DNA of 64,000 nucleotides, taken from Octopus sinensis. Its lineage: Eukaryota. A program made the translations under genes and the position numbers. The DNA is taken from NCBI RefSeq assembly GCF_006345805.1, contig NC_042997.1, positions 85,994,001-86,058,000 on the forward strand, in the 5' to 3' direction. The first letter of the stretch is position 1. The number at the start of each line of letters is the position of its first letter. Below are positions 9,935-60,042 of the stretch, one piece after another. The notes under the pieces were generated by a model. The model ran no database searches. It was not told the DNA's origin and worked only from the letters and a program-made list of their open reading frames with translations.

Positions 9935-10817
9935 TAGGGTAATTGAAAAGTAATTCCCTATTTTAAAATACTTATAATCTATTTATTAACTATAATTTTT
10001 AGAAAAATTGAATATGTGAAGAAAACGTATAGCATGGAGTTTTATTTAAAGTTTTGATATAGGCACCAGCATTTGCCACCAGCTTCTCAAGTCACTCAGG
10101 AACTGCAACAACTGATTTCATCAGGAACTTTTGAGTGAGGAAGATGTAACTTCTCGTATTTACCATTCAAGTTCTTCCAAAGTCATTGGTTTGGTAGAGT
10201 AGACTTGCAAAGAAAAAAGTTGCAGGGTGTTAAATCAAGGCTTCTGGCCAACCAATCATGCAGACCTCAATGACCCATCCATCTCCCAGGGAAGTGAGTA
10301 TTCAGCCATTCACAAACAACAATAGCAAAATGGAGGAGCACCATCTTTCATAAAAAATCAAATCTTCAATATTCTCCCAAGTACTGATAACTGGACAAAT
10401 TTCATCTTGCAGTATGCTGAGGTACCTTTCAGTATTCATGGTATTGCAAAGGATGAAAGGACTAACAATCCTGTTCAAAGTCATTCCACACCATACCATT
10501 ACCTTGGACCGATTCTGCATTTTTTCAGAGGTAATACGAGGATCTTCTTCTGCCCAGTAGTGGTAGATGTGACAGTTCACAAACCCACTGATGTGGAATA
10601 TTGCTTCATCACTCGAAAGGATATTTTTAAAGAGATCACACCATGTTTATTGGGCTTCTAAATTTCAATCAAAATAATCGATCTGAAAAAAGAAAACAAC
10701 AATATAGAATCGATTCCCATACATTAAAAAACATACACAACAAATTTGAGAAAAAATTATAGCTAATAAATAAATTATGAGTATTTTAGAATAGGGAGTT
10801 ATTTTTCAATCACCCTG
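9935..10817 (-). mobile_element. Internally deleted Tc1/mariner-superfamily transposon, DD41D (rosa/Visitor-type)
   Basis: 66-bp TIRs at 9935-10000 and 10752-10817 (CAGGGTGATTGAAAAATAACTCCCTATT..., ~8 mismatches) in TA/TG context. The broken transposase reads ..ILSSDEAIFHISGFVNCHIYHYWAEEDP..KVMVWCGM..; DGAPP(H)FA..FPGRWMG..WLARSLDLTPCNFFL, with 41 residues between the 2nd D and the 3rd catalytic position (D>N). Confidence 0.9.
10190..10640 (-). pseudogene. Transposase catalytic-domain pseudogene (frameshifts, stop codon, N-terminal HTH region deleted)
   Basis: ORF 10302-10580 plus adjacent frames. Confidence 0.85.
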
Positions 10818-11449
10818 TGTGTGTGTGTGGGGGGATGCATGCCTGCATGCATATATCCCACTGTTTTAACCAGGATCTCAGAAGGTCACTATGCACTTCT
10901 TTGCATTGTTGTAGTTTTGAATGCTGCCACTCCACTGGCAAGGTAGGCAGGCCAGTATTTCCCCTGACTAGAAAACCAGTCTATGACAGAAGTACCCATT
11001 TACAAATGAAGCATTTTGCTCAATAAAATACACTGTCAGTCTGGAAATGGAAACCACAATCTTGCAATTGCAAGTGCAGCATCCTAAACATAAGGGCTGT
11101 GCACCTTCTCTCTCTCTCTCTCTCTCTCTGTTCAAAATGCAGAGTAGATAAAACAGTGGACAACTGATGAAGAGAATGTTCTTTATGTTGCCTGTCTCGT
11201 TTCTGTATTTGTTTCTTTCATTGTTTGAAAAACAAGTTCGTTTTCCATGTTTTTGTTTTTTATGTTCTCATTTCTCATTTTGTTCACATTTTTTTTGACA
11301 CTCTGTACCTATATATGCATGTATATATATACATATATATGTAGGTATGTACATATATGTACGTATATATGCATATATATATGCATATATATATATATTA
11401 TTTATATTATTATATGATCGAATATCATGCATCCATTTCTAAGTAAGTT

Positions 11450-15184: not shown

Positions 15185-15498
15185 ATGGAGGCACAATGGC
15201 CCAGTGGCTGGGGCAGCGGACTTGCGATCGGAGGATCGTGGTTTCAATTCCCAGACTAGGCGTTGTGTGTGTTTATTAAGCGAAAACACCTAAAGCTCCA
15301 CGAGGCTCCGGCAGTGGGTGGTGGCGACCCTGTTGTGCTCCTTTGCTCCAACTTTCTCTCACTCTTTCTTCCTGTTTCTTGAGTAACGCTGCAATGGACT
15401 GGCATCCCATCCAGCTGGAGGGAACATACACCACAGAAACCAGGAAACTGGACCCATGAGCCTGGCTAGGCTTGAAAAAGGGCGCATAAATAAATAAA
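15185..15498 (+). mobile_element. Young full-length tRNA-derived SINE ('family D', tRNA-Arg-like head) with perfect 13-bp TSD
   Basis: Head GGAGGCACAATGGCCCAGTGG..GGTTTCAATTCCC; (TAAA)n tail; TATACTTCACTTA at 15172-15184 and 15499-15511; many CpGs retained. Confidence 0.92.
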
Positions 15499-16439: not shown

Positions 16440-17703
16440 ATAGATAAATAAATGGAGTTAAACGACACAGGTGTTATTCAAATTCTTTTACTTCCAACAT
16501 ACGTTTCGAAGACAAAAGGAATAAAATGGTGTAATACAATGTAATCTTCTCATCAGGGAAAGAAAGAAAGAAACCAAACTCATCAATAAGATATTTTAAC
16601 TGAATGTGATGGATGTGTATGATGAACGGAACACTAAAAATTTTTTTGAAAAACCATTAGAAGATATAACGTCAAAGATAGCCTATAGAAAGAGAAGGGG
16701 TAAAGGAAAGAAATAAGCAGAAAACTAATAAAGAGCGATATGTGAATTAAAATTAAAAGCTTAAAGGCTTGGAAATAGGTATATCTAGTGGAAGTGGAAT
16801 GTAAGAAGAAAATCAATGCTCAAATTATATAGAATGGTAGATATCACTTATATGAACTAAAGGTATGCTTCTGTCAATGTTTACATCGATAAGCACACTC
16901 TATAAATGTGTTTACAAGGAGATTCTTAGAAAATAGAATATAAAGTAGTTTACTATTACAGAGTTGGCAGAATTCTTTGCCTTTATCGTATGGGAATGAA
17001 ATGGAGAGAATCAACCAATCTAAATTCTCTCCATTTATTATGATCTTTTTAGATACCAAATTAATTTACTAAGCCCTGTACTGTTGCATTTATTACTATC
17101 CCTAAATTTAGAGTAATGATTAGAAATTCTTTCAGTTAACTAAGAAGAACTACCTATATAAAAAAGACATTGGTTCCGGAAGTAATTTTACACTGGTACA
17201 TAGAGTTTTTACTCTTAAAATTATTAGACATAAACTTAATTCTGTTGGAATTGACTTCAGAGACAATAACCTTGTTGTTAATATTTCTAGGGGGATGGTT
17301 GCTATTAGCTAAATTAATGTTATTATTTTCAGTAATTGGATTTTTATTTAACAGACTGATATTATGTGAAGAGATAATTTGTGAAAGATTTTTTGTGTTA
17401 GAAAAGCTAATCCTAGCTGTGTGTGAGTTTATAATTGAGTAATACCTAGAATTCTTTTGAAAATTCTTAATAATAGCTTCATGGAACTGGAAAGGAAGAT
17501 TTGGTTTAATTTGCCTCCCATAAGGAATAATCAACCAAATAGTTTTGCTTGTGGTTGCCTTATTTTTAGTGTAACTATCTTTAAAAGACATCGATTTACC
17601 TTTAGAATGAAAAAAGGGTCTTAAATAACATACCAAAGTTGTCTTTGAAACATATGTTGAAAGTAAAAGAATTTGAATAACAGCTGCGTCGTTTAACTAC
17701 ATT

Positions 17704-17705
<2 letters not shown>
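16440..17705 (-). mobile_element. 5'-truncated Penelope-like element (RT C-terminal linker + GIY-YIG endonuclease) with inverted terminal segment
   Basis: Minus ORFs ..RYYSIINSHTARISFSNTKNLSQIISSHN..SMYQCKIT..; YIG region by frameshift; ..WLILSISFPYDKGKEFCQLCNSKLLYIL..AYRCKH. 16440-16513 (minus) is repeated in inverted orientation at 17640-17705. Confidence 0.85.
16491..16561 (-). ncRNA. Type I hammerhead ribozyme in the PLE 3' terminal repeat
   Basis: TTTCC-CTGATGA-GAAGAT(~30 nt)GTCTTC-GAAA-C-GTAT-GT-T|GGAAG. Canonical core, 6-bp stem II, minimal stem III, 5-bp stem I, GUU triplet; predicted cleavage between 16496 and 16495. Confidence 0.75.

Positions 17706-17770
<65 letters not shown>
17705..17770. 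repeat. (TA)n microsatellite
   Basis: Directly visible. Confidence 0.95.
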
Positions 17771-17775
<5 letters not shown>

Positions 17776-18007
17776 CATTTCAGCCATGTGGCTGAAATGA
17801 TACTGAAAAAAGTTTGATTTTATTCTGTGCTACTTCAAATTTTTGCAGGCCTCTAATGGGAGGCCAACTCCGACAGGCTTCTGGAATACCAATTCAACAT
17901 TCCAGACAGTTTGACAGGAGCTGGCCAGGCAGAAGCCTGTACCATACTTGTGTGTCTATTTTGGCACTGTTTTTACAGCTAGATTGCCCTTCCTAACACC
18001 TAACACT

Positions 18008-18066
<59 letters not shown>

Positions 18067-18573
18067 ATTTATGTAATACAAAGTAGAGGAAAATGAAAAT
18101 GCAAATCCTAGGCAGTCAACCAAATTCCCGAATGCATAAATGAAGATATTCAATCATTGTAATTGAATCATATATGTTTATACACATCAACATAAATCAT
18201 GCATGTATAGGCATATTCTCCAAGGGTATAAAAAATAAAACCATACATAAAAATATAGGAGAGATATAAAAGCATATAAAAATATGTAAAATGCATATAA
18301 AATCACATATAAATAAGGATTACATGTAAAAAGTTATGCTTGATAAATACAAGAGGCACAAAGCGAATGAGAGTTTGATAAATATAGGAATAAAAATGTC
18401 AATGTTCAAAATGGCAGACTGCCTAAATTGTCTAAAATTTCTAATACATCTAAAATATTTGTTTGACTGCCTAGGTTTTGCGTTTTCATTTTCCTCCACT
18501 TTGTATTATTTTGCATTGGCTCTCTACGAGCAGGCTGTAAATAGCCTATACTTTCTATAACATACTTAATATT

Positions 18574-18730
18574 ATGTATGTATGTATGTATGTATGTATG
18601 TATGTATGTATGTATGTATGTATGTATGTATGTTTGTATGTATGTATGTATGTACATGTATGTATATGTGTGTCTGTGTACGTATATATATATATATATA
18701 CACACACACACATATATACATAACTATATA
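18574..18730. repeat. (TATG)n microsatellite grading into (TA)n/(CA)n
   Basis: Directly visible. Confidence 0.95.
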
Positions 18731-18779
18731 TGTGTGTGCGTATTAAAAATGGGGAAGGCTGGTTTATGGGACTATCCTA

Positions 18780-19310
18780 GGTTTCTTTCCATAGAGGGTT
18801 TAGCTTTATGGCATATCATCAAATTCCAAAACCTGTTGGCCAATGACCTCTTCAAAATATGGAGGGTGAAATGCCTCACTACTCAGAGGTAAACAATTAA
18901 GGATTATCTCCCTTTGCTTTTGGCTATTGACTTCTGGCTGTGCAGCCATCTTGTCAGTTCCAAAAAGCTAACAGGAACCTCCTAAAATGTAAACATGACT
19001 CCAAAATCTCCGTTCATAAGTTAAGGATGTTCCCTCGTTTGAGCGAGTCTTTTAGGATTCTTGCATGTTCAACTATGCATAGCTTGCAATACTTCATCCC
19101 ACTGATATAGGGGCCTGCATTCTTGAGAATTTTCCATGAGATCAAGTATCGGATCCCATCATCTCTTAGCTGCCAGATGTGGCTGACCAGGGACGTTACG
19201 TATCTCCTTTCTGGAACCCTGAAGGAGGACCTGTGGTTGGAGACATGCTGTTTGAAAAAGTTCCCAGAACATCCAATGTATCTCCATAGGTGTGTGTTGT
19301 CAGTCCTGTG
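18780..19310 (-). mobile_element. Penelope-like element 3' fragment (GIY-YIG endonuclease)
   Basis: ORF 19014-19331: WRYIGCSGNFFKQHVSNHRSSFR..SLVSHIWQLRD..ISWKILKNAGPYISGMKYCKLCIVEHARIL..NILNL. Confidence 0.85.
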
Positions 19311-19439
19311 CCCCCCCCCACACACACACATATAACAACATCAACAGTAAAGCCAAAAAATGATAATTATAAATTATAAACTTTTGTTTATAATTTAGTA
19401 TGCAGATGAAGAGCTGTACAACAGGTTTATGCATGCTCT

Positions 19440-19770
19440 TACAGACTGGTTAGCTTGATGCATAAGTGGAAAGGGAATTCCAGAGATTTTCAGTTTGGGG
19501 AAGGAAAATTGAATGAAATGTTTAGTGTGAAGTTTGGAAGATGAGATGCAGTTTGCAGAGGGCATTTCAGCTCAGAAGAGCAGAGATCATTGCTAATGCA
19601 ATGGAAGAGACAAAGAGAATAAACAGCATATTTGTGAGCCAGCAGCTACAACATATTAAGTTAATTGGTCTAATCAGTCAAATGGCATTCTTTTAGAGAC
19701 ATGCTAGGATATGTGTGTGTGTGTGTTTGTGGTGTGTAGTACACAGGCCATATACATACTATGAGAGAGT
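19440..19770 (-). mobile_element. CR1-clade LINE ORF2 C-terminal relic
   Basis: Minus frames give HILACL*KNAI*LIR..LAHKYAVYSLCLFHCISNDLCSSEL..NLWNSLS, matching the CR1 'ILDRIQKRAIRLI..LAHRR.VSSLCLFYRY..LCSSEL..LWNSLP' pattern. Confidence 0.65.
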
Positions 19771-20529
19771 GTAACATGTCACAGTGATACACACATGCAT
19801 GGATGCTGCAAACTTCATTTTGTTGCAGTGTACCACAGATTATTCTCATTGGATGTCTCCTGCTGAAGTGACTACATGATGAAGATTAATGTTTGCAAAT
19901 CTCTTTTAATATAAATTTTGTTTTTAAATCTGACAATGGAAAGGTAGCATCAACTCCATTAGGATTTGAAAGTAGCACAATAGAAAGTCTGGTTTGAGTA
20001 ATACAGTAAATTACACTGTTTTGACCACTAATATTGATTTCTAAATTGACTGCACATCACAGATTTGTTGAAATATGGGAATATACATCTTGAATGAACG
20101 ATCATCTAGAAAAGCTGTTAAGCCTAATTAACACTCTGTGTTCTGTTAGTCTTTTAATGTCAACTATATTACTCTGATATTAATTTCTCTATTTGACCTC
20201 TGATCTCTATCGAACTACACTTCAATATATGCACCATGTTGTTGCATATGATAAAGAAATTCTCATCTTTGGGTATCATATGTGGTGGATTTGCAGCATT
20301 GTTAGAGTACAGAACTAAATGGTTTACTGTATGTTTTTCAGCTCTCCACACTTGAGTTCAAATTTTGCAAAGGTTAGTTTTGCCTTGCAGCCTTTAGGGG
20401 TTGAATAAAGTACTATTCCAAGGGTATTAGTCCAAAGTGGTTGACAAATGGAATAATTAGAGAATCACTCAAGGTGTCATCTAGTATCTGTTGCAACTCT
20501 TTGTCTTGAGTTCTTGGGGGCAGACTTAC

Positions 20530-20668
20530 TATGTCAGTTGGTTTAACCTCACCAGCTGACCCTTGTGTGTTTTTAGTGGAGTTCCCTTTGTTGCAAGCAC
20601 TTGGTTCAGACAGATCTCTGATTTGAAGATAACTCTCTCCCTCCCTCCCACTGTCCATCTGTCTTAAG
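20530..20668 (-). CDS. Candidate internal coding exon (139 nt) of an unidentified gene; alternatively a terminal exon reading to TAG at 20413
   Basis: Acceptor ttttcattattttcttttaccatttAG (plus 20669-20670); donor ATA|GTAAGT (plus 20524-20529); open frame LRQMDSGREGESYLQIRDLSEPSACNKGNSTKNTQGSAGEVKPTDI; purine-rich and not a recognised repeat. Confidence 0.45.
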
Positions 20669-21247
20669 CTAAATGGTAAAAGAAAATAATGAAAATTTTA
20701 AAAAATGAATATAACCGGATTGTTTAAGTGGCACTGTAAAGGGATGAGGTATAGTCAACTCTTGTGATGTTTTAAGTGAGAAAAGTAAAGCAATGAGATG
20801 AGTTAAAGAAAGTGCTTCTATATGGTTTCTTGAAATATCAGCCAAATTTTCCTCTAATCTTATCTTTAAACAAGAAAATTGCATCAAAGCTATGTGTAGT
20901 GATGTCATATATGGCATGCAGACCATCATTTAATTTGTTTAACAAGCACATGTGTTTATTTTTCTCTTCTGTTTTACAAATCCACTGTGCACATGCACAT
21001 TGCATGTTCATACTTCTCTTTCCAGTTCCTACTCAGAGCTATTTACAGATCACAACCATCTCACAAACCTGCATTCCAGGGAGCACTTCATGCTCCAATG
21101 ATTGCGAAAAAAGGAAGGCCATAAAAATGTAGTCTTCGATACATCAGTTGAAGAAAAAAGATGGATTACAGATGGAATGCCTCCAATCATAAGTCATATG
21201 TATCCTTGACTAGGTTCCAAGGGCTAAAAAAATCAAGAAAAATTAAG

Positions 21248-21444
21248 TAAATATTGTAAGGCATTTAGTTCAGTGTTCTAATGTGTGTTGCATTTTATTG
21301 CTGTCCTCTTCTTGATCAATTATATTGACTTCAAATTTAAATAAATATTTAAATAAATATTGTAAGGCATTTAGTTCAGTGTTCGAGTGTATGTTGCATT
21401 TTATTGCTATGCTCTTCTAGATCAAACATATTGACTTTCAAATT
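21248..21444. repeat. Tandem duplication, period ~106 bp (2 copies)
   Basis: TAAATATTGTAAGGCATTTAGTTCAGTGTTC... at 21248 and 21354. Confidence 0.9.
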
Positions 21445-24837: not shown

Positions 24838-25155
24838 CTGTCAGTTACAATGATGTGGGTTCCAGTTGATCCAGTCAAAAGAACAGCTGCCCTTGAAATT
24901 AACATGGAAGTGGCTGAGCATTCCACAGATATGCATACCCTCACCATTGTTCTCAAGGAGATTCACTGTCACACAGAGTGTGACATAGCTGGACCTTTGA
25001 AATAGAAAAACAACTCCTTTTTACTTAGTTGAATGGACTGGAGCATCATGAAATAAAGGGTCTTGCTGAAAGACACAGTATACTGCCAGGAATCAAACTC
25101 AGGACCATACGATCATGAAGTAAATACTCTAACCACTAAGCCACATGCCTTCACC
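24838..25155 (-). mobile_element. SINE family G
   Basis: Homologous to 33572-33870 and 42072-42380. Confidence 0.8.
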
Positions 25156-33571: not shown

Positions 33572-33870
33572 ATATGTATGTTTGTATACATTAAGGTGGC
33601 ACTCAATCAGTTTTGATAAGTGTTCCACATGATCAACAGAAAAGCCTGTTCCACAGACTTGTCTACCTTTAATGTGGTTCTCAGGGAGATTCAGCATGAA
33701 ACAGAATATGACAAAATTGGCCCAATGAATTACAGGTACAACTCATTTTTACCAGCTGAGTGGACTGGAGCATTATGGACACAGGGACACAATGTGCCAC
33801 CTGGAATTGAACTCATGACCTTATGATCTTGAGCTGAATACCTAAACACTAAACCACACACCTTCACCAT
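33572..33870 (-). mobile_element. SINE family G
   Basis: Homologous to 24838-25155. Confidence 0.8.
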
Positions 33871-34443: not shown

Positions 34444-34552
<109 letters not shown>

Positions 34553-35283: not shown

Positions 35284-36200
35284 TGGACGTTACACATCCA
35301 ACAAAGAATGCTTACTCCAGTTCTTTCTGCCCTTCACAAACTCTCTGCATTCAGAGCCCATGTCTTGCTACTATGCAAAAATGTATTTCATACACAATCC
35401 TCACACAGCCTTCATTTTACTCTGACCAAGAAGTTCTTTGTTACCAGAAATGCTAACCGTGCCCCTTAACCCTTTAGCATTCACATTCTGTCAAATGTAG
35501 TACTTATTTAATCATATTGTTATGAACTCATCATCATCATTATCTAACATCTATTTTCCATGTTGGCATGGCTTGGACAGTTTTCCTGAAAACTGGTAAG
35601 CTGGGGAGCTGCACTAGGTTCCAATCTTATTTGGCATGGTTTCTATGGCTGGATACCCTTCCTATTGCCAACCACGCCAAGAGTGTAGTGGGTGCTTTTT
35701 ACTTGCCACCGGCATGGGTGCCAATTATATAACACTATGCATTATCTCCTAGTTTCAAGATGTCAATGATACACTTGCTTTTTGTGTTTTTAGAATGGCA
35801 TTTAGGGTAGGTATGAGAGGCTGAATCTGGCCAATTTGAAGATAAAACAAAAACCATATTTGCACTGGATATGACCAGTTTGAATGCCAAAGGGTTAAAC
35901 TTCTTCCAAGCCATTCTTATCAAGGCTACTGTGCTTTTAGAGGCCCCATCTCTGCTGCTTATCAAGTAATCAAGTAGCAGAAGTTATCAATTACTTCTAG
36001 AGAACCATCAAAACATTTGAGAGAATTTGTTCTAAGTGTGCTCTTAGTGTCTACTGGTATGAAGAAGATAACATTTACTAAATCTACCTTCTTCAGTAGC
36101 CTTCCTCTGATTCCACTGCACATTTTGTGTGGGCATCCTTTAATCTGAGTACATTGAATGCAATGCAACTTTTTATGTATTCTTTTTCTGTATGCCAACC
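35284..36200 (-). mobile_element. RTE-clade LINE ORF2 relic (post-RT region) split by a MITE
   Basis: 35899-36200: ..HCIQCTQIKGCPHKMCSGIRGRL..LEVIDNFCYL..ISSRDGASKSTVALIRMAWKKF. Continues at 35284-35465: FLVTKNFLVRVK*RLCEDCV..LHSSKTWALNAESL*RAERTGVSILCWMCNV. Confidence 0.85.
35470..35894 (+). mobile_element. piggyBac-like MITE M1 carrying a family-E insertion (~35528-35735, minus)
   Basis: TTAA|CCCTTTAGCATTCA ... TGAATGCCAAAGGG|TTAA; TSDs at 35466-35469 and 35895-35898. Confidence 0.85.
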
Positions 36201-36295
36201 ATCACCATTTCCCTGTTAGTACTAGTGTCTTGTCATTTTACTACATACTAGTGCATTAGTCTTCACAAAGTTCATGTGGGTGTGGGTGTATATAA

Positions 36296-39059: not shown

Positions 39060-39690
39060 GTTTAGTTTCTATGGTGATCTTAAGGCCAAGATTGTTGAGG
39101 CTGTGTATGATGTCTTTTCTAAGCCTATCTAAAATATGGCTGTTAACGCCTCTGGAGATGGCTAAGGCATCATCTCTATATAAGCCGAAGTGGACAGAGG
39201 GGAATTAATTACCCAGGTTATCCAGAATGTAAAACCCAATAAGGTCACAGATATCAGCGCTGTCATATGCCCTCATTGTGACATCGAATAAGCCTTTGGG
39301 GTCAGTTTCTTTGACTCAGGTCGAATACTGGTTGAATAGTTTTCCTAGCATTTCTCTATCATTTATGTCAGTAATTCGTCTAGCATATACTAATGCCCTA
39401 TCAAGTAGCATTTTCAATACCAATGGATAAAAGTCTACTGTATCGAATTGTATGAACTTAGCTTTAAAAGTGTTTTGCTTGGTCTCAAACCAATGTAACA
39501 CCTTGATTATGTTAAGCCAGAAATAGAAATTAGATACCTTCCTTATATCTTATTTAACCCTTCTTAGGATGTGTTTACTCACCTGTCCAATTTCGGACTT
39601 GGCAAAGTTAATCAGGCAGCATTTAGGATTGGAAGTGAAGTTTGGTTTATGATCCTTTATAGTTATAAAGGCATGATACTGCATAGACCC
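39060..39690 (-). mobile_element. Penelope-like element reverse transcriptase relic
   Basis: Minus frames: [36 protein letters not shown]..; FIQFDTVDFYP..; FDVTM..; GLYRDDALAI..LGLKITIE. Confidence 0.88.
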
Positions 39691-44115: not shown

Positions 44116-44702
44116 ATGGTGCACATGTGCGCACTCATGCACGCAGACACGCACACACACATGAGCTTGATATCACACTGATCATTTCGATTAAATCTTT
44201 ATATTTCAGCCTTTTTTCCTCCACTTTTGGTTGCAAGGACCCCTCTTTTAAGTTTTGGTCTCATAAGCCATTATTAACCTTCTTCCACTTTGGGCCTTGA
44301 TGATCTTCAGCCCAGTAGTTTAAATGAATTTTTTTTCCTTTTTATTCCTTCATACCTTTCTAATACAGTAATCCTATTTTTAGCCTTCTCACCTTAATTT
44401 TTCCCTCCATCTCACACTTACCAGCTTATCTTCCACATTTCGTTTCTCTTTCCTTTTCTCACTCTCACCTATTTGCTCATTCCGACTATTTCTTGTCTAT
44501 GAATGCACACTCATATTGTCTTGTGTTTCCCATCAGCTGCAACCAGTTGCTCAAACATAGATGATATAAAGCTACTGTTTTTCCTCTTTTTGTTTTCTTC
44601 CTAATGTCCTCTTAAACATGAAAAAGTGTTGGATATTTCACTCTCCACGAAAATTTTACTTGAACTCAGTTTTATTATATATATATGTATCCGCGCGTGT
44701 GT

Positions 44703-47194: not shown

Positions 47195-47720
47195 ATGTAC
47201 TCTCCATGCTGGCATGGGTTGGACAGTTTGACTGAAGACTGGCAAGCCAGAAGGCTGTGCCAGGCTCCAATCTAATCTGGCAGAGTTTCTACAGCTGGAT
47301 GCCCTTCCTAATGCCAACCACTCTGTGAGTGTAGTGGGTGCTTTTTACATGCCACCAGCAAAGGGCCAGTCAGGCATTACTGACATAGATCACACTTGAA
47401 TGGTGCTTTTTACATGCCACCAGCATGGGAGCCAGTCAAGTGGCTCTAGCATTAACCACACTCGAATGTTGCTTTTTATGTGCCACCAACACAGGTGCCA
47501 GTTAGGCAGTACTGATGACTTGACTCAACAGGTCTTCACAAGCATAGTTTATTGCCCAATGATTGAAGGGTACTCTTAAATGGGCCGGTTATGCTGCACT
47601 GCCATAGGCCATGGTCATAGTCTCACTTGGCTTGCTGTGTCTTCTCAAGCACAGCATATCTCCAAAGGTCTCAGTCACTCGTTATTGCTTCCGTGAGACA
47701 CAATGTCCAACTTTACTCTC
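47195..47720 (-). mobile_element. RTE LINE 3' end: ORF2 C-terminus, stop codon and 3' UTR with three ~55-60-bp tandem units
   Basis: Minus ..DLWRYAVLEKTQQAK* joined to the family-E tail; GTGCTTTTTACATGCCACCAGCA-like unit x3 (47338-47500). Confidence 0.82.
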
Positions 47721-48893
47721 AAGGTGCTTATACTCTGTCACACACGCACACTAACATTACACATCCATCGGAGCATACTAGCTTCATTTCTTGCAAGCTT
47801 ACGCATGTCCTCAGCAGTAAGGATTGGGGAGTATTAAGCCTTTGGAGGTGTTTGGGGGAAAGACATCCAATAGCGGTCAGAGGATAGAGACTTTGGTACC
47901 AGTGGTGGGGATGGGAAGGGTAGGCACACCACAAAACAGCAAAAACTCAGGCTGCCAGTGTGAAGGAATAGTAATAATAATAAGATAGAATTGGGCATTT
48001 GCATTCTTAACTGGGGCTATAACCAACAGTTTTTGGTCAGCCAAACTGTGACAAAATTAGAGAAATGAATGAATAAATGACAATAATAAATGAGTGGGAA
48101 AGAGAGGGAGAAGGGAGAAAGAGGTAGAGTTGAATTGAGCTTAGGCATCTTAAGTTTTTTTTATTATTGAAAATTTTTTTTTTCTCTAAACATATGGCAT
48201 GCAAGACGAAACTGTGTTTACATAGATAATGTAATGAAATATTAAAGTAATTATAATTTGCACTATAAAAGAGGTTTTAGACATGTGCTAGGTTGGAGAA
48301 CAAAGTTGCTTATCTGCACATCTTCTGATTTTTACTTCATGTGGAAAGGTATAAAATAATATGAGGTAGGGGAATCTGAATGAGCTAGTTTATATAGGGT
48401 GGGGTGAGCTGGGGTTTAGTGGAGCTAAAGTGTTGGAAGAAACAGGTGTTTAATGAAACTGAGAGAGAGAAAGAGAGAGAGAGCAGGGTTAGCTGGTCAA
48501 AGATAGAAAACGAGGAGACGGAATTTTGGGGATTTAGGGTAACATAATGGAGTGAATGGGTTTAACATTGCCCCTACTGGTGTGAAAGAATAGTAATAAT
48601 AATAATGAGATAGAATTGAGAACTGCGAAACAGCAAAAGCTCAGGCTACTGGTGTGAAAGAGTAGTAATATATCTATATATAGATATAGATATATATATA
48701 CTTTTTATTTGTGGGTATGTATATACACACAAACACACAAAAATGTGTGTGTGTATGAACACAGGCATGCATAAACACATACCTTAGGCTTCTACTCTAG
48801 CCCTTGGTTGACCAGTACCTTGTGAGTGGATTTGATAGATGAAAGCTGCTATTATATATGTGTGTATTTTTGTGTCTCCTTATCTTGATACTG

Positions 48894-49144
48894 TGGAGGC
48901 GTGTGGCTTAGTGGTTAAGGTGTCAGCATCATGATCATAAGATTGTGGTTTCGATTCCCGGACCGGGCGACGTGTTGTGTTCTTTAGCAAAACACTTCAT
49001 TTCAGTTCACTCAGATGGCAAAAATGAGTAACGCTGCGATGGACTGGCGTCCCGTCCAGCTAGGGAACACATACACCACAGAAACTGGGAAACCGGGCCC
49101 TTGAACCTGGCTTGGCTTTAAAAGGGTGCATTTATTTTTTATTA
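48894..49144 (+). mobile_element. tRNA-derived SINE (G-type head, D-type tail) nested in a family-B/C SINE, with 14-bp TSD
   Basis: TTATCTTGA(T/C)ACTG at 48880-48893 and 49145-49158; host SINE spans ~48780-49330. Confidence 0.88.
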
Positions 49145-49626
49145 TTATCTTGACACTGCATGTTAGTTGTACATGATTGTTATATCATACAAGCATTATT
49201 CCGCAAAGACATGTTTGTTTACGTAAAAATATTACCTTGCTTGGAAATAAGCAGTGGTTGGTGACAGTAAGTACACCCATCCATAGAAATCAGACTCCAT
49301 AAATTCTGTCTAACCCATGAAAATGATGAAACTTGTAAGTAAAACAGATAAAATGTCTTAAGCATTCAACTACTAGGTCATTGATTTTGACTCAGTAACT
49401 GGTGTTTCATTGTATTTTTTCACAGACCCACTTTATTCCATGGGAGTTGTGTTTATTTAGTTGATGGAAATAAATACCATTCTGTTTAACAGATAATTGT
49501 AAGACTGTCAAATCGCTTTGAAACTAAAGAGATGTAGAGATCTTTGTTTTATGCATAACTGCTTACAAATTTATCATGCACACAGTTTTAATTAATTTAT
49601 GCAACCATTTTTTTTTTCTTTTATAG

Positions 49627-49683
49627 GTAAGCAATATATTTACGCTGTCTTCATTCAAGAATATGAATTTCTTTGAGAGAGTG
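49627..49683 (+). CDS. Candidate 57-nt exon whose first bases are themselves a 5' splice site (AG|GTAAG)
   Basis: Acceptor T11-C-TTTTATAG (AG at 49625-49626); donor GTG|GTAAGT (49684-49689). Phase-0 frame is open (VSNIFTLSSFKNMNFFERV); the other two frames contain stops. Confidence 0.55.
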
Positions 49684-50469
49684 GTAAGTAAAGACATATT
49701 TGAGCCAAAGATGACCTATTTCAATGTGAAATCTGATCTTTGTTGGAATCAGTATTCTGACAGGTGCTAATGACAGATCCTCTTCATAGTTTCTTGACTT
49801 TTTACTTATAGCAACCAAATTTCCTTCAAATCATGTTTCAAGCTACAATACCTTTGATCATAGATCTTCGTAGTTAGGGTTGATCTGATGCTAAACAGTA
49901 ATATTGTGGATAAATATCAGATATATTTAGTACTTTATCTAACCTTCATAAACTTGGACAAGTTAGAGTTTTTTACTCAAAAAAATTGACAGTGAAAAAC
50001 TACATGCAACTTACCCACTGAACTCTGTGTGGTGGCTGACAATATATCACACACGCACATACACACACACACACGCACACACATGCATATGCATAATTGA
50101 TTGTGCAAGATTGATTGGCCATGTCTCTATTAAGTCTTCATGAATCTCCTCATCAAGAAAAGAAATATATTTTTGACACCATCATGCTTGAGCAGTTAAA
50201 CAAACATAACTGTGGTCATATGTCTTCCCTCTACATGAAATATATTTGCACAGTTCTCTATGGGCCATCTGTAATTCTAATACCCATTAGATGCTGCATA
50301 TATTGTCAGTCAGTCAGAAGGAGAGCCTTAAAAGCACCAGGTTATCAATTCGTTCTGAGCATAGATCATAACAACACATTGCTATGATATCGTTGGTTCC
50401 AGGACATTGCTAGACTGTTTTAGCAATAATTGGAATGGTTTCAGTTTAATATTTTGCTTTTTTATTTAA

Positions 50470-50679
50470 TTCAGATTATTTTGTCAAATGTAATAATTAT
50501 TTATTCACATTGTTTTGAATTAATAAAGCATTATCTCATAGCTTCCAGATTCTAATGATGAGACTGTTTATTTTTAGAATGACATGGTAGGGGAGGTGTG
50601 AGAAGTAGATCTGGCCAGTTCAAGCATAAAACAGATAGAATATTTTAGATTTGATATGGCCAATTTAAATGCTAAATGG
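50470..50679 (+). mobile_element. piggyBac-like MITE M1 (degenerate ends)
   Basis: Homologous to 24321-24525. Confidence 0.75.
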
Positions 50680-53504
50680 TGAAACCCTACTGCAAGTGGA
50701 GTTGTTAACAGTATTTATGAAAAACATGTAATTTATGTACATGTCAAAAACTAAAGCCAAAATATAAACACAAAGAAGGTGATACTTTTCAATCGCTGTG
50801 ACTTATATGATTCATTAGCAATTTCTTTTTCTTCTTCGGTATTATACTTCCAGCTATTGTTCATGAGCTTTCCTAATTAGTTCTGACTGAGCAGGCCTAT
50901 GAATAATGCGTTGAAATCTTGATCGTCTAATCCTTGTTGAAATAATAATGTATCCTCAACTACATTACTCTGGATATCATGTTCTCATCTCTTTTTGAGA
51001 AGGTAGTGGATGTGATTTGGTTTCTATATCAACCAGGTTTGAGTAGCTGTATAGAGGCTTTTGCTTTGGGTCATTCTGCCTTTAATCTGTAGGAGTAAAG
51101 AAGGTTTTGTGCTTGAACTGTCTGCTGGATATTAGTGTCATTTATTTAATAAACCTAGAGGGATGAGAAGCATTGTCAGCCTCCAAACATGACATAAACT
51201 CAGGAACAGGAGCCCATTATCTAGATTTCATAAGCCATCTAATTCCAGTGCTACATCTGTGAGATTGTTTTATTTAATGTTTATTACATTATGAAAGGGA
51301 TTAGTGTCTTAAGTGAAGTTATGTGAAGTAGCAAGGGCTGGAAATGAAAACTAGTTCTAGTATCTTGTTAGAAGCTCTCTTACAACTTATTTGACAGTAT
51401 TTATTCATGCATTTGATGCTGATTATTTGTTTTCTCTGTAGGGAGAAGGTATATGATTTTTCCAGGAAGAATAACCGGATGCTAAAATGTTTGTCTTTCA
51501 CTAAGAGCATTAGTTATACAAGTAAATTGAAATGGCTTTGAGAAAGAGTAAAATTTGCTAAAATACTGCTAATAATTTGGTTTGACTAGAGTTCTATGAT
51601 TGGATTTATTATTTATCAACCACAACCAAGAGGTGGGGGTCATGAGGAATGTCGGTTTGCAGAATGTGTTTCTTTCTCCCTCCCTCCCTCCCTCCCTCTC
51701 CATACACATTGGTTTTAATTCAGAATAAGATACAAATTTAAATTGATACTCTATAAAGAAGTTAATTTAGTCTTTGTTTAAAGCAATTTGCAAACTTTAA
51801 AACCCCTTAAGGGGGCATATACAGTATGTCAAACAGTGTGTCATATTTTCAACATTGTCTGACTTTCATTGCCAGCTAACCCAAAATATATTTTAGTGCA
51901 AGACTAAATATATTTTCTTATATAGAATTAATATTTTAATATTGCTCTATAGTGTGTTTCATAAAGTCCCTTGTTAATTTCTATCTGAAAGTACATGCAA
52001 CTTGTTCCTGCAAAATTTTACTAAAATGATGCAAACATCCATTTTCCCATGCTAACATGGGTTAGACACGGAGTTGTTTGGGGTAGGATTTTATAGACAG
52101 ATGCTCTCCTTCTCACCAACCCATACCTGTTTTTCAAATATAGGATTTTATTTTTGTTCGACATTGATATTCACTAAGAAAGGTTAAAGGTACCCAGGAC
52201 TGTAGACTACTCAGCCATTTACATGCTAATTCAATGAACAGACCATTTCCATTGATCAATCAATTGGAACACTTATCATTGAAACCAAACAAAGATCCAT
52301 TTACACATGCATGCGCACACGTACGCACACACACACATACACATACACACACACGTGGGTGTAAAGTAAAATCATGAAATCTTTATTGAAAATTCCTTCA
52401 CATTGTTAAGCAATCAGATTCCTTTTTTGAACAAATTTACAACTTGGAAAAAAATCATTTCTGTAGAAACTTTTAGCATTAATTTGATTTCTCTTCCATT
52501 TCCTGATAACGTTTAGAAAGAGATAAAAGTTGAGGTAGTGGGGAATGAATTAAATAAAAAAAGAGATAAAATAGCTATTGCTTAAACTGGATTATGAAAC
52601 TAATGCACTGCTTGCTATGTTACCAGAGTAACAAAAGTAGTGTCTATACAGATGTTCAAATCACTAGAAAGAGCAACCAAATCACACCTCATTATCCCAC
52701 CCTACCCTCTTATAAAAGAAATAACTATTTAGGACAATGTGGTTTGAGATACAGTGTATGAATTGAAAACACGAGATGGTCATGACTGGAATGTTTTTGG
52801 TAATAGATTTGCTCTAATGTGACTGACCAGAGTGTAAACAGCAATGTAGATAATTCAGTGAGGGTGTGTGTGTATGATCTCCAAATTTGCTTATAAATAG
52901 CAACCACCTCTCCCTCTAATCCAAAATTATAAAGAAAGGACTTGTTGAATATTCTGTTTCTAGATTTATTATGTCTAAAATTGTTTTGCCTTTCTTTTAT
53001 AATGTGGAATGGCCACGGCTGGAACATCTTTGATCATAGATCTTTTTTATCAGGGCCTACCTTGGACTAAACAACAATATGCCTTTGATTATCAATTATA
53101 AACTTTCCATTTTAAATGCATATGTGGAATTAGATAAAGCAAGCTTACCCATTGCTTGCTTCCACACACAAACATAAAATACACACACAAAAACAACAAA
53201 AAAACCTGACAATTTCTAAAGAATTTCATTATAAAATGCCGACGGCATATATAATGAATATAAATGGCACCAGTGATAGATCTAAGCAGTGTCGAAATAA
53301 ATAAGTAAATAAGCAGAATAGTAAATATATTTTAAAAACCACAAAAAATTCAGCTGCTTCTCCTCAAAGTGGAATTTCTATCATAATCTATTTAGTTTCA
53401 ATTGCAATGTTTTGTAATTTGTATATGTGAAATATAAATCTGCAGGCTTCAAATATTGACCCAGTGAATCTATTCAGAGCTTGAAAGACAGCATAAGGTT
53501 CTAT

Positions 53505-54605: not shown

Positions 54606-55213
54606 GCCCACTCTACATAACTATCTTTCATTTCTTCAGTTAACTTTGTGATCTTGGTCGAAGTTTTTCTCACTTGAGAAAAACCAAATCAAATCAAATC
54701 TTCTGCTGGATTTTTCAGTTTGTTTAAGAGCCTTTTAGATCTGGTGTAGTGATCTTTTGCATTTTCTGACAAATTGACCCTTCCACATCATATAAGACTT
54801 ATATCTGATGGCTTCATGGACAACATTTCTGACTGTTCCTTCTGACACATGGAGATCTTTTGCAATTGACCTCATAGACTTTCTGGGAATGTAATCAATG
54901 GTCTGTTGAACTTGCTAGTGTTCTGATGATTTCAGAGCATTTAGAGTGCTTTTTATGCTTTGATACTGGTGATACATTTTCATCTTCAGTCTCTAGTTCC
55001 TTACAAACTTTGTAGATGAAAGATCTGGTAACTTTTAAAATTCAGGATATTTCTAAATCACGCCTTTATAACCACAATAACAGCATGCTTCTTCATTTCT
55101 TGAGTAAGCTGAGGGTCTGCCATTATTTTTTTTTCTGAAAGATTATACAGAGTTAGCAAAAAATGCAACAATGACCCCCAAAAGGTATGTCCTCAAATAC
55201 CTTATGCACCCTG
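54606..55213 (-). mobile_element. Tc1/mariner-superfamily (maT/DD37D-like) transposon, 5' half
   Basis: End CAGGGTGCATAAGGTATTTGAGGACATACC; ATG at 55123 gives MADPQLTQEMKKHAVIV..; RSKRLLNKLKNPAE..LIWFFSSEKNFDQDHKVN*RNER*LC. Subfamily inferred from N-terminal motifs only. Confidence 0.8.
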
Positions 55214-59864: not shown

Positions 59865-60042
59865 ACAAAATGAAAAAGGCATTGCCCTGGAGGATGATGA
59901 GAGAGATGTTGAAGTGATTGCAGAGCAATATGAAATTAAGTGTTTTGCTCAAGAACACAACATATCTCCCAGTCTGGGAATTGAAACCATGATCTTGTGA
60001 TTATGAGTATGATGCCCTAACCACTAGGCCACACACCTTCAC
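59865..60042 (-). mobile_element. SINE family G fragment
   Basis: AAATTAAGTGTTTTGCTCAAGAACAC..CCCTAACCACTAGGCCACACACCTTCAC. Confidence 0.7.

What the first reader, a model, noticed from the sequence alone, without database searches (positions are those of the whole stretch)
49590..49689. Recursive-splicing-like site: strong 3' splice site fused to GTAAG, plus a downstream donor
Seen: T-rich tract + TAG immediately followed by GTAAGC, then a consensus GTG|GTAAGT 57 nt later, in unique sequence inside tens of kb without other clear plus-strand exons. Known: AG|GT ratchet points and RS-exons subdivide very long introns in Drosophila and vertebrates, and competition between the two donors decides skipping versus inclusion. 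I am not aware of a described cephalopod case. Inclusion is either in-frame (19 aa) or a poison exon, depending on upstream phase.
Basis: partly seen in the sequence, partly recalled or inferred. Interest (0 to 1): 0.7.

Follow-up and report, generated by a model that had tools for sequence, protein, structure and literature searches.

The report
Recursive-splice-site look-alike, use unproven
The sequence does contain a textbook-looking "recursive splicing" signal (a strong intron end fused to an intron start, with a second intron start 57 bases on), but nothing available here shows that this DNA is transcribed or spliced, so it is an untested candidate and could be a coincidence.

Summary
Observation confirmed. 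A 15/15 pyrimidine run plus TAG ends at 49626 and is fused to GTAAGC (49627). GTG|GTAAGT follows, with its GT at 49684. The 57-nt interval is open in one frame only.

It is the best of 398 AGGT sites in the window on both strands (10.7 vs 6.9 bits). It has TT at -6/-5, three branch-point-like motifs and a 41-nt AG-free zone. The sequence is unique within the window.

Chance expectation per 64-kb window:
- fused motif: about 0.05-0.08
- fused motif plus a downstream donor: about 0.0007-0.005

In a genome of a few Gb (size assumed) that still means tens to hundreds of accidental copies.

What is missing is everything that defines recursive splicing beyond the motif. I found no host gene, no plus-strand exon in 64 kb, and no protein containing the 19-aa peptide. 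Transcription and conservation data were out of reach. The strand-composition signal is ambiguous.

The regenerated donor (xxx|GTAAGC) would at best tie with the downstream donor for U1 pairing. Known silent ratchet points usually have the stronger regenerated donor.

Verdict: cannot tell. My estimates are about 0.5-0.55 inert coincidence, 0.25 real recursive-splicing exon, and 0.15 ordinary or cryptic exon. I could not verify that the source is a cephalopod. Interest is modest.

The parts
49591..49599 (+). Three overlapping branch-point-like YTNAY motifs (TTAAT, TTAAT, TTTAT), with candidate branch A at 35, 31 and 27 nt upstream of the AG
   Evidence: The nearest upstream AG lies 41 nt before the junction, so all three sit inside the AG-free zone. 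The match is motif-level only, and AT-rich DNA gives such motifs often.
49608..49623 (+). Polypyrimidine tract T10CT4 followed by AT; TT at positions -6/-5
   Evidence: Only 0.93% of 19-mers in the window (1.28% on the + strand) score as high. TT at -5/-6 is present in 196 of 197 Drosophila ratchet points (bioRxiv 10.1101/006163).
49625..49632 (+). Fused acceptor|donor core AG|GTAAGC, the putative ratchet point; junction between 49626 and 49627
   Evidence: The acceptor ranks 8th of 3446 AG on the + strand. The combined score is the best of 398 AGGT on both strands.
49627..49683 (+). 57-nt putative RS-exon, open in frame 0 (VSNIFTLSSFKNMNFFERV) with stops in the other two frames
   Evidence: No protein among 5.8 billion shares three 5-residue words with it. 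Amino-acid composition log-odds is -3.4, resembling random AT-rich translation rather than protein.
49681..49693 (+). Downstream donor GTG|GTAAGT (GT at 49684), overlapped by a second GTAAAG 4 nt later
   Evidence: The donor ranks 12th of 3812 GT on the + strand. Predicted U1 duplex is -10.7 kcal/mol.

Best explanation
The most likely single reading is a splice-signal look-alike. A pyrimidine run, an AG|GTAAG junction and a consensus donor lie 57 nt apart by coincidence, in AT-rich, repeat-rich, non-coding DNA. On this reading the site is not used by the spliceosome, or is at most an occasional cryptic pseudo-exon.

What is shown:
- the motifs are real and are the best of their kind in the window
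- no coding exon, host gene, RNA family or structure is associated with them

What is inferred: non-use. That inference rests on base rates, since large genomes hold many more good-looking pseudo-exons than real exons. It also rests on the lack of any supporting context, not on a direct test.
For: - Genome-scale expectation. Per-window rates are 0.046-0.08 for the fused motif and 0.0007-0.005 for the full architecture. These scale to tens to thousands of accidental copies in a Gb-size genome.
- A strong acceptor/donor pair alone is common. There are 14 acceptors and 22 donors of this strength in the window, giving about 0.2 such pairs per window.
- No plus-strand exon or gene appears in 64 kb. 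Splice-site and ORF scans found nothing convincing. Pfam was empty for all unique ORFs >=40 aa on both strands. The Protein Data Bank (PDB) search was empty for the plus strand.
- The 19-aa peptide and its read-through ORF have no relative in 5.8 billion proteins.
- The minus-strand ORF across the site has none in 1.84 billion representatives.
- Peptide composition is unlike protein.
- The regenerated donor only ties (-11.0 kcal/mol with an upstream CAG) or loses (-9.5, -8.0, about -4.4) against the downstream donor at -10.7. In known silent ratchet points the regenerated donor is generally the stronger one (PMC8605326).
Against: - The full architecture is rare at window scale (about 0.001).
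- The site beats the next AGGT by 3.8 bits.
- It carries extra hallmarks that were not used to pick it: TT at -6/-5, three branch-point-like motifs and a 41-nt AG-free zone.
- Exon length (57 nt) matches the roughly 50-nt cryptic RS-exons and the 51-nt Ubx microexons.
- The sequence is unique, not a repeat copy.
- The plus strand is T>A in 13-15 of 16 bins. In mammals that bias marks the sense strand of transcribed DNA.
- The Pfam and PDB scans on concatenated ORFs lose about 6 bits of sensitivity and cannot see short or non-coding exons.
Confidence: 0.52

Rival explanations
1. It is a real recursive-splicing exon inside a very long (>64 kb) intron of a plus-strand gene.

Proposed mechanism:
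1. The 57-nt unit is first defined as an exon by its acceptor and the 49684 donor.
2. The upstream exon is spliced to 49627, which regenerates a donor xxx|GTAAGC.
3. That donor competes with GTG|GTAAGT.
4. Use of the regenerated donor removes the unit without trace. Use of the downstream donor includes it, adding 19 aa in phase 0 or a premature stop in the other two phases.

The two donors are nearly balanced, so the outcome would probably be alternative inclusion of the Ubx mI/mII type rather than a silent zero-nucleotide ratchet.
For: - All motif-level features are met: fused SA|SD, strong pyrimidine tract, TT at -6/-5, branch-point-like motifs, an AG-free zone, and a second donor 57 nt downstream.
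- The combination is rare at window scale.
- No other plus-strand exon lies in 49 kb upstream or 14 kb downstream, as expected deep in a long intron.
- There is T>A strand bias on the plus strand.
- Recursive splicing exists in both insects and vertebrates (PMC8605326), so it may be ancestral to bilaterians.
Against: - There is no evidence of transcription, of a host gene or of conservation.
- The GC skew goes the opposite way to the mammalian transcription signature, and poly(A)-signal hexamers show no consistent sense-strand depletion.
- The regenerated donor is not stronger than the RS-exon donor.
- In vertebrate-sized genomes most motif matches are not used. Only nine fully suppressed intronic ratchet points were noted definitively in mammals.
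- If the exon were often included in phase 0, its peptide might be expected in predicted proteins, and it is absent. It is not known whether this species' proteome is in that database.
Confidence: 0.25
2. It is an ordinary or cryptic exon that happens to begin with GTAAG. It could be a cassette, poison or decoy exon, or an exon of an unannotated non-coding or UTR transcript. It would be spliced conventionally through its acceptor and the 49684 donor, and the internal GTAAGC would never be used as a donor.
For: - The acceptor and donor are both in the top 0.3% of their kind on the strand, at typical microexon spacing, and one frame is open.
- The downstream donor pairs with U1 as well as or better than the regenerated one, which favours plain inclusion.
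- By composition about 1 exon in 500-1000 would start with GTAAG (my estimate).
Against: - No protein contains the peptide.
- The composition is not protein-like.
- No neighbouring exons, Pfam or PDB similarity occur on the plus strand.
- There is no transcript evidence.
- Two of three phases give a stop.
Confidence: 0.15
3. The T-run is the poly(A) tail of a minus-strand retroposon, and the 'exon' is that element's 3' end. The signals would then be a by-product of an insertion.
For: - Read on the minus strand, the tract is AAAAGAAAAAAAAAA, directly downstream of the 49627+ sequence.
- T-runs >=8 outnumber A-runs 28 to 9 on the plus strand.
Against: - There is no second copy of 49201-50039 in the window.
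- There is no target-site duplication. The only flanking direct repeat, 10 nt at 49539 and 49735, is at chance level and wrongly placed.
- There is no AATAAA upstream of the A-run on the minus strand (read).
- This origin would not by itself prevent the site from being spliced.
Confidence: 0.05

Closest known systems
Drosophila Ultrabithorax microexons mI and mII (recursive-splicing exons; Hatton et al. 1998, as summarised in PMC8605326)
   Same: Both are short exons whose length is a multiple of three (51 nt there, 57 nt here). Both begin with a functional-looking donor directly after a strong acceptor and have a second donor at their 3' end. Competition between the donors would decide skipping or inclusion. 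The nearly balanced donor strengths here resemble this alternatively included type.
   Different: The Ubx exons lie in a known 73-kb intron of a known gene, are seen in mRNA isoforms, and resplicing was demonstrated experimentally. Here there is no gene, transcript or peptide evidence.
Drosophila intronic ratchet points with cryptic RS-exons (kuz, Bx, luna and others; Burnette 2005, Duff 2015, Joseph 2018/2021, Pai 2018)
   Same: The shared features are a fused (Y)n-AG|GTAAG motif, TT at -5/-6, a prominent pyrimidine tract, a cryptic exon of about 50 nt with its own donor, and no nearby annotated exon.
   Different: Those sites are ultraconserved, show sawtooth RNA-seq profiles and junction reads, and generally have a regenerated donor stronger than the RS-exon donor. 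Their exons are generally out of frame. Here conservation and RNA are untested, the regenerated donor has C at +6 and is not the stronger one, and the length is 3n.
Vertebrate RS-exons in long neuronal genes (Sibley et al. 2015; Blazquez et al. 2018, PMC6224609)
   Same: Both fit the exon-definition model: an acceptor plus a downstream donor defines an RS-exon, a regenerated 5' splice site forms after the first step, and inclusion gives a poison-exon outcome in the wrong context.
   Different: The vertebrate cases were found from RNA data in genes >150 kb (from my own knowledge). Here only the motif exists.
Intronic pseudo-exons and decoy exons
   Same: Both are pairs of good splice sites at exon-like spacing in non-coding DNA, with no coding content and no evidence of inclusion.
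   Different: Typical pseudo-exons do not begin with a consensus donor. The added GTAAG lowers the chance expectation about 100-fold or more (about 0.2 strong pairs per window versus 0.0007-0.005).

Membership tests
Recursive splice site (ratchet point) with RS-exon | [quoted passage not shown] | tested here: met
   T10CT4-AT-AG|GTAAGC at 49608-49632. It is the best of 398 AGGT sites and the only AGGTAAG with a Y-tract.
Recursive splice site (ratchet point) with RS-exon | TT at positions -5 and -6 of the acceptor (196 of 197 Drosophila ratchet points) | tested here: met
   (T, T). The criterion comes from bioRxiv 10.1101/006163. Whether it applies outside Drosophila is unknown.
Recursive splice site (ratchet point) with RS-exon | Usable branch point upstream with no intervening AG | tested here: inconclusive
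   YTNAY motifs lie at -35, -31 and -27, and the nearest upstream AG is at -41. This is compatible with use, but such motifs are frequent in AT-rich DNA and no lariat data exist.
Recursive splice site (ratchet point) with RS-exon | Short (about 50 nt) cryptic exon closed by a downstream donor, allowing exon definition | tested here: met
   A 57-nt unit is closed by GTG|GTAAGT at 49684, the 12th of 3812 GT on the strand. The criterion comes from PMC8605326.
Recursive splice site (ratchet point) with RS-exon | Regenerated ratchet-point donor generally stronger than the RS-exon donor (for silent, zero-nucleotide use) | tested here: inconclusive
   The intronic half GTAAGC is weaker than GTAAGT. 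U1 duplex energies are -11.0 (upstream CAG), -9.5 (AAG), -8.0 (GUG) and about -4.4 (no G), against -10.7 for the downstream donor. The result depends on an unknown upstream exon, is at best a tie, and leans towards not met.
Recursive splice site (ratchet point) with RS-exon | Lies on the sense strand inside a long (>10-20 kb) intron of an expressed gene | tested here: inconclusive
   No plus-strand exon was detectable in the window, which fits a >64-kb intron or intergenic DNA. Strand composition is T>A but C>G, and poly(A)-signal hexamers are not informative. No host protein was found.
Recursive splice site (ratchet point) with RS-exon | Strong evolutionary conservation of the AG|GT core relative to flanks | not testable with these tools
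   No DNA collection of related eukaryotic genomes can be searched here. A metagenome scan for the core found nothing.
Recursive splice site (ratchet point) with RS-exon | RNA evidence: sawtooth intron coverage, exon-to-ratchet-point junction reads, lariats starting at the ratchet point | not testable with these tools
   No transcriptome data were available. Exact look-ups of five window ORFs in the assembly collection returned nothing.
Ordinary protein-coding cassette microexon | Encoded peptide present in, or homologous to, known or predicted proteins, with flanking coding exons nearby | tested here: not met
   No protein shares three 5-mers with the ORF. There is no Pfam hit apart from one at E=0.057, below cut-off, to a phage family. 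Composition log-odds is -3.4. No neighbouring coding exons were found.
Retroposon 3' end (minus strand) supplying the T-run | Other copies of the element, target-site duplication, and a poly(A) signal before the A-run | tested here: not met
   The sequence is unique in the window. There is no convincing target-site duplication and no AATAAA. Genome-wide copy number was not testable.

The most novel reading that the evidence does not exclude
The site is a working recursive-splicing exon in a >64-kb intron of a cephalopod gene. Its two donors are nearly balanced, so it acts as a switch between traceless removal and inclusion, adding 19 aa or a premature stop depending on phase. This would be the first recursive-splicing case described in a mollusc or lophotrochozoan, and would suggest the mechanism is ancestral to bilaterians with long introns.
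Probability: 0.25. Interest if true: 0.55.

Novelty: not a real feature. Interest (0 to 1): 0.25.

Why it matters
If real, it would extend recursive splicing from insects and vertebrates to a third major animal lineage with very long neuronal genes. It would also give a concrete, testable site where two balanced donors decide between silent removal and a poison or in-frame microexon.

That would be a new member of a known kind, expected by many specialists rather than surprising.

As it stands, it is one motif match without RNA, gene or conservation support. Its main value is as a coordinate to check once total RNA-seq and sister-genome alignments are at hand. I chose the novelty label 'not a real feature' because my leading reading is a non-functional coincidence. 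The motifs themselves are real.

Tried and rejected
1. Coding-exon reading. The 47-aa read-through ORF had no relative in 5.8 billion proteins, so a conserved coding microexon is rejected.

2. Host-gene hunt.
   - Stop-to-stop ORFs, splice-site PWM pairing and amino-acid composition scoring on both strands found nothing convincing.
   - Pfam on the 10 longest ORFs was empty.
   - Pfam on all unique ORFs >=40 aa, concatenated, both strands, was empty.
   - PDB on all plus-strand ones was empty.
   - Caveat: concatenation costs about 6 bits. A weak HTH match seen on a single ORF was not seen in the concatenated run.

3. Retrieving the locus from other assemblies. Exact look-up of five window ORFs found none on record.

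4. Taxon check through transposon ORFs. The 180-aa ORF gave no hits. A concatenated query gave three mariner-like transposases. The best is from NCBI assembly GCA_040777565.1, whose organism I could not resolve. 'Cephalopod' therefore remains unverified.

5. Minus-strand reading. The ORF across the site had 0 hits in 1.84 billion representatives.

6. Structured RNA. Rfam gathering found nothing. The local E-value scan gave only CA-repeat noise. Folding z-scores were -0.04 and +0.15. Rejected.

7. Retroposon-tail origin. No repeat copy and no target-site duplication. Rejected at window scale.

8. Strand of transcription from composition. T>A but C>G, with poly(A) hexamers ambiguous. Inconclusive.

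9. A second double-donor match at 44416-44470 (-) has a purine-rich upstream region, so it is not a ratchet-point candidate.

10. A metagenome scan for the core sequence found nothing.

Full report
**1. What is in the sequence**

Reading the plus strand:
- 49608-49622 is T10CT4, 15 of 15 pyrimidines.
- A-T-AG follows, ending at 49626.
- GTAAGC begins at 49627.
- GTG|GTAAGT has its donor GT at 49684, exactly 57 nt later.
- An overlapping GTAAAG sits 4 nt further on.

The 57 nt are open only in frame 0 (VSNIFTLSSFKNMNFFERV). Phase 2 meets TAA at once, and phase 1 meets TGA near the end.

- TT at -6/-5.
- Three YTNAY branch-point-like motifs at -35, -31 and -27.
- No AG between -41 and the junction.

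**2. Is it more than chance?**

Within the window, yes, moderately.
- Only five AGGTAAG occur on the two strands, and this is the only one preceded by a pyrimidine tract.
- On a simple acceptor-plus-donor weight matrix it is the best of 398 AGGT sites, 10.7 bits against 6.9 for the runner-up. About 6% of order-3 Markov windows reach that score.
- The search tool's own dinucleotide shuffles expect 0.08 matches to Y15-N-Y-AGGTAAG, even allowing two mismatches.
- Using the real frequency of equally good tracts in this window (0.93% of positions), the expectation is 0.046 per window.
- An equally strong donor 30-120 nt downstream has probability 0.015, and any decent donor 0.11. The full architecture is therefore expected 0.0007-0.005 times per window.

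A strong acceptor/donor pair without the GTAAG is not rare, at about 0.2 per window.

At genome scale the picture changes. If the source is a 2-3 Gb genome (my assumption, not verified), these rates give roughly 2,000 fused motifs and 30-200 complete look-alikes by accident. One instance, chosen because it looks good, cannot be called significant.

**3. Surroundings**

- The site lies in an 840-bp stretch (49201-50039) with no other copy in the window. It is flanked by a tRNA-like SINE copy (48893-49131) and another repeat (50469-50685).
- 27% of the window is repeated within itself, and there are 71 tandem-repeat arrays.
- No Rfam family passes threshold. A permissive local scan gives only CA-repeat noise.
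- The region has no unusual RNA folding on either strand (z = -0.04 and +0.15).
- A retroposon-tail origin for the T-run has no support. I found no second copy, no target-site duplication and no poly(A) signal.

**4. Gene context**

I looked for any exon or gene on either strand.
- Stop-to-stop ORFs, pairing of scored acceptors and donors with open frames, and an amino-acid composition log-odds found nothing protein-like. The candidate peptide itself scores -3.4.
- Pfam found nothing in the ten longest ORFs.
- Pfam found nothing in any unique ORF >=40 aa on either strand.
- PDB sequences matched none of the plus-strand ORFs.
- These concatenated scans lose about 6 bits and cannot see short or non-coding exons, so this is absence of strong evidence only.
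- The read-through ORF from 49627 has no relative among 5.8 billion proteins.
- The minus-strand ORF over the site has none among 1.84 billion representatives.
- Exact look-ups of five window ORFs in the assembly collection found nothing.

The only homology in the window is to transposons. A mariner-like transposase remnant at 10109-10818 (-) is 74% identical to a 332-aa protein of assembly GCA_040777565.1. I could not establish the organism of that assembly or of the window, so 'cephalopod' is unverified.

Strand composition:
- The plus strand is T>A in 15 of 16 4-kb bins, or 13 of 16 after removing repeats and homopolymers.
- It is also slightly C>G, which is not the mammalian sense-strand signature.
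- Poly(A)-signal hexamers are uninformative.

Whether the plus strand is transcribed remains open. The lack of exons fits a >64-kb intron and intergenic DNA equally.

**5. How it would work if used**

This follows the model summarised in PMC8605326.
1. The 57-nt unit would first be recognised as an exon.
2. The upstream exon would be joined to 49627, regenerating xxx|GTAAGC.
3. That donor would then compete with GTG|GTAAGT.

Predicted U1 pairing:

| Donor | Upstream exon ends in | kcal/mol |
|---|---|---|
| Downstream GTG\|GTAAGT | n/a | -10.7 |
| Regenerated xxx\|GTAAGC | CAG | -11.0 |
| Regenerated xxx\|GTAAGC | AAG | -9.5 |
| Regenerated xxx\|GTAAGC | GUG | -8.0 |
| Regenerated xxx\|GTAAGC | no terminal G | about -4.4 |

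In known silent ratchet points the regenerated donor is generally the stronger. Here it at best ties. If the site works at all, it would more likely behave like the alternatively included Ubx microexons, which are 51 nt and also a multiple of three. It could also act as a poison exon in two of three phases.

**6. Comparison with known systems**

- Motif-level membership criteria are met: the fused SA|SD, TT at -5/-6 (196 of 197 Drosophila ratchet points) and a roughly 50-nt RS-exon with its own donor.
- The donor-strength criterion is inconclusive and leans towards not met.
- The long-intron, sense-strand criterion is inconclusive.
- Conservation and RNA evidence (sawtooth, junction and lariat reads), which are what actually define recursive sites in the literature, cannot be tested with these tools.
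- In the held literature no paper describes recursive splicing in a cephalopod or mollusc. The one co-occurrence of the terms is in a reference list.

**7. Verdict**

Observation confirmed; interpretation cannot be decided here. My estimates:

| Reading | Probability |
|---|---|
| Inert coincidence or, at most, an occasional pseudo-exon | about 0.5-0.55 |
| Real recursive-splicing exon | about 0.25 |
| Ordinary or cryptic exon that merely starts with GTAAG | about 0.15 |
| Retroposon by-product | about 0.05 |

If real, it would be a new member of a known kind in a new lineage: useful but not startling. Interest is 0.25.

Noticed in passing
window 10109-10818 (-): A mariner/Tc1-like transposase remnant. 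ORF 10305-10646 is 74% identical to a 332-aa protein (P0001) from NCBI assembly GCA_040777565.1. It has 84% nucleotide identity over 554 bp to that contig. The family has no Pfam model hit.
   Followed up: partly
window 48893-49131 (+); also 15380-15487, 59931-60042 (-), 25049-25154, 33741-33867: Several copies of a tRNA-like SINE (69-85% identical to each other). One lies 500 bp upstream of the finding. Neither ARAGORN nor Rfam calls them tRNA.
   Followed up: partly
whole window: Persistent strand asymmetry. The plus strand is T>A in 15 of 16 4-kb bins (13 of 16 after removing repeats and homopolymers) and slightly C>G. T-runs >=8 number 28 against 9 A-runs, and pyrimidine runs >=15 number 27 against 13 purine runs. 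This could reflect transcription, the orientation of retroposon tails, or replication; I did not resolve which.
   Followed up: partly
window 44390-44470 (-): A purine-rich stretch with three consensus-like donors (AG|GTGAGA, CTG|GTAAGT, AAG|GTGAGA) within 80 nt on the minus strand. There is no pyrimidine tract, so it is not a ratchet-point candidate.
   Followed up: yes
window 54738-54914 (-): A short ORF with sub-threshold matches to helix-turn-helix domains of transposases (HTH_Tnp_ISL3 E=5e-4, HTH_Tnp_Tc3_2 E=0.03, all below curated cut-offs). It is probably another decayed DNA-transposon fragment.
   Followed up: partly
window 17157-20697 (-), 35738-36201 (-), 39319-39549 (-): Longer ORFs that look transposon-derived by eye. 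An example is a LINE-like C-terminal motif at 35738-36201. All are on the minus strand. They have no Pfam hit, and the 180-aa ORF 17157-17696 has no database relative.
   Followed up: partly
window 34444-34551; 21243-21444; 47337-47513: A perfect (ATCT)27 microsatellite; a 106-bp unit repeated 1.9 times (89% identical); and a 66-bp unit repeated 2.7 times. Overall there are 71 tandem-repeat arrays, and 27% of the window is repeated within itself.
   Followed up: no
window 49539-49548 and 49735-49744 (+): An exact 10-nt direct repeat, GATCTTTGTT, brackets the candidate exon (186 bp between the copies). Its frequency is at chance level for this composition, and it is not placed like a target-site duplication of a poly(A) element.
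   Followed up: yes
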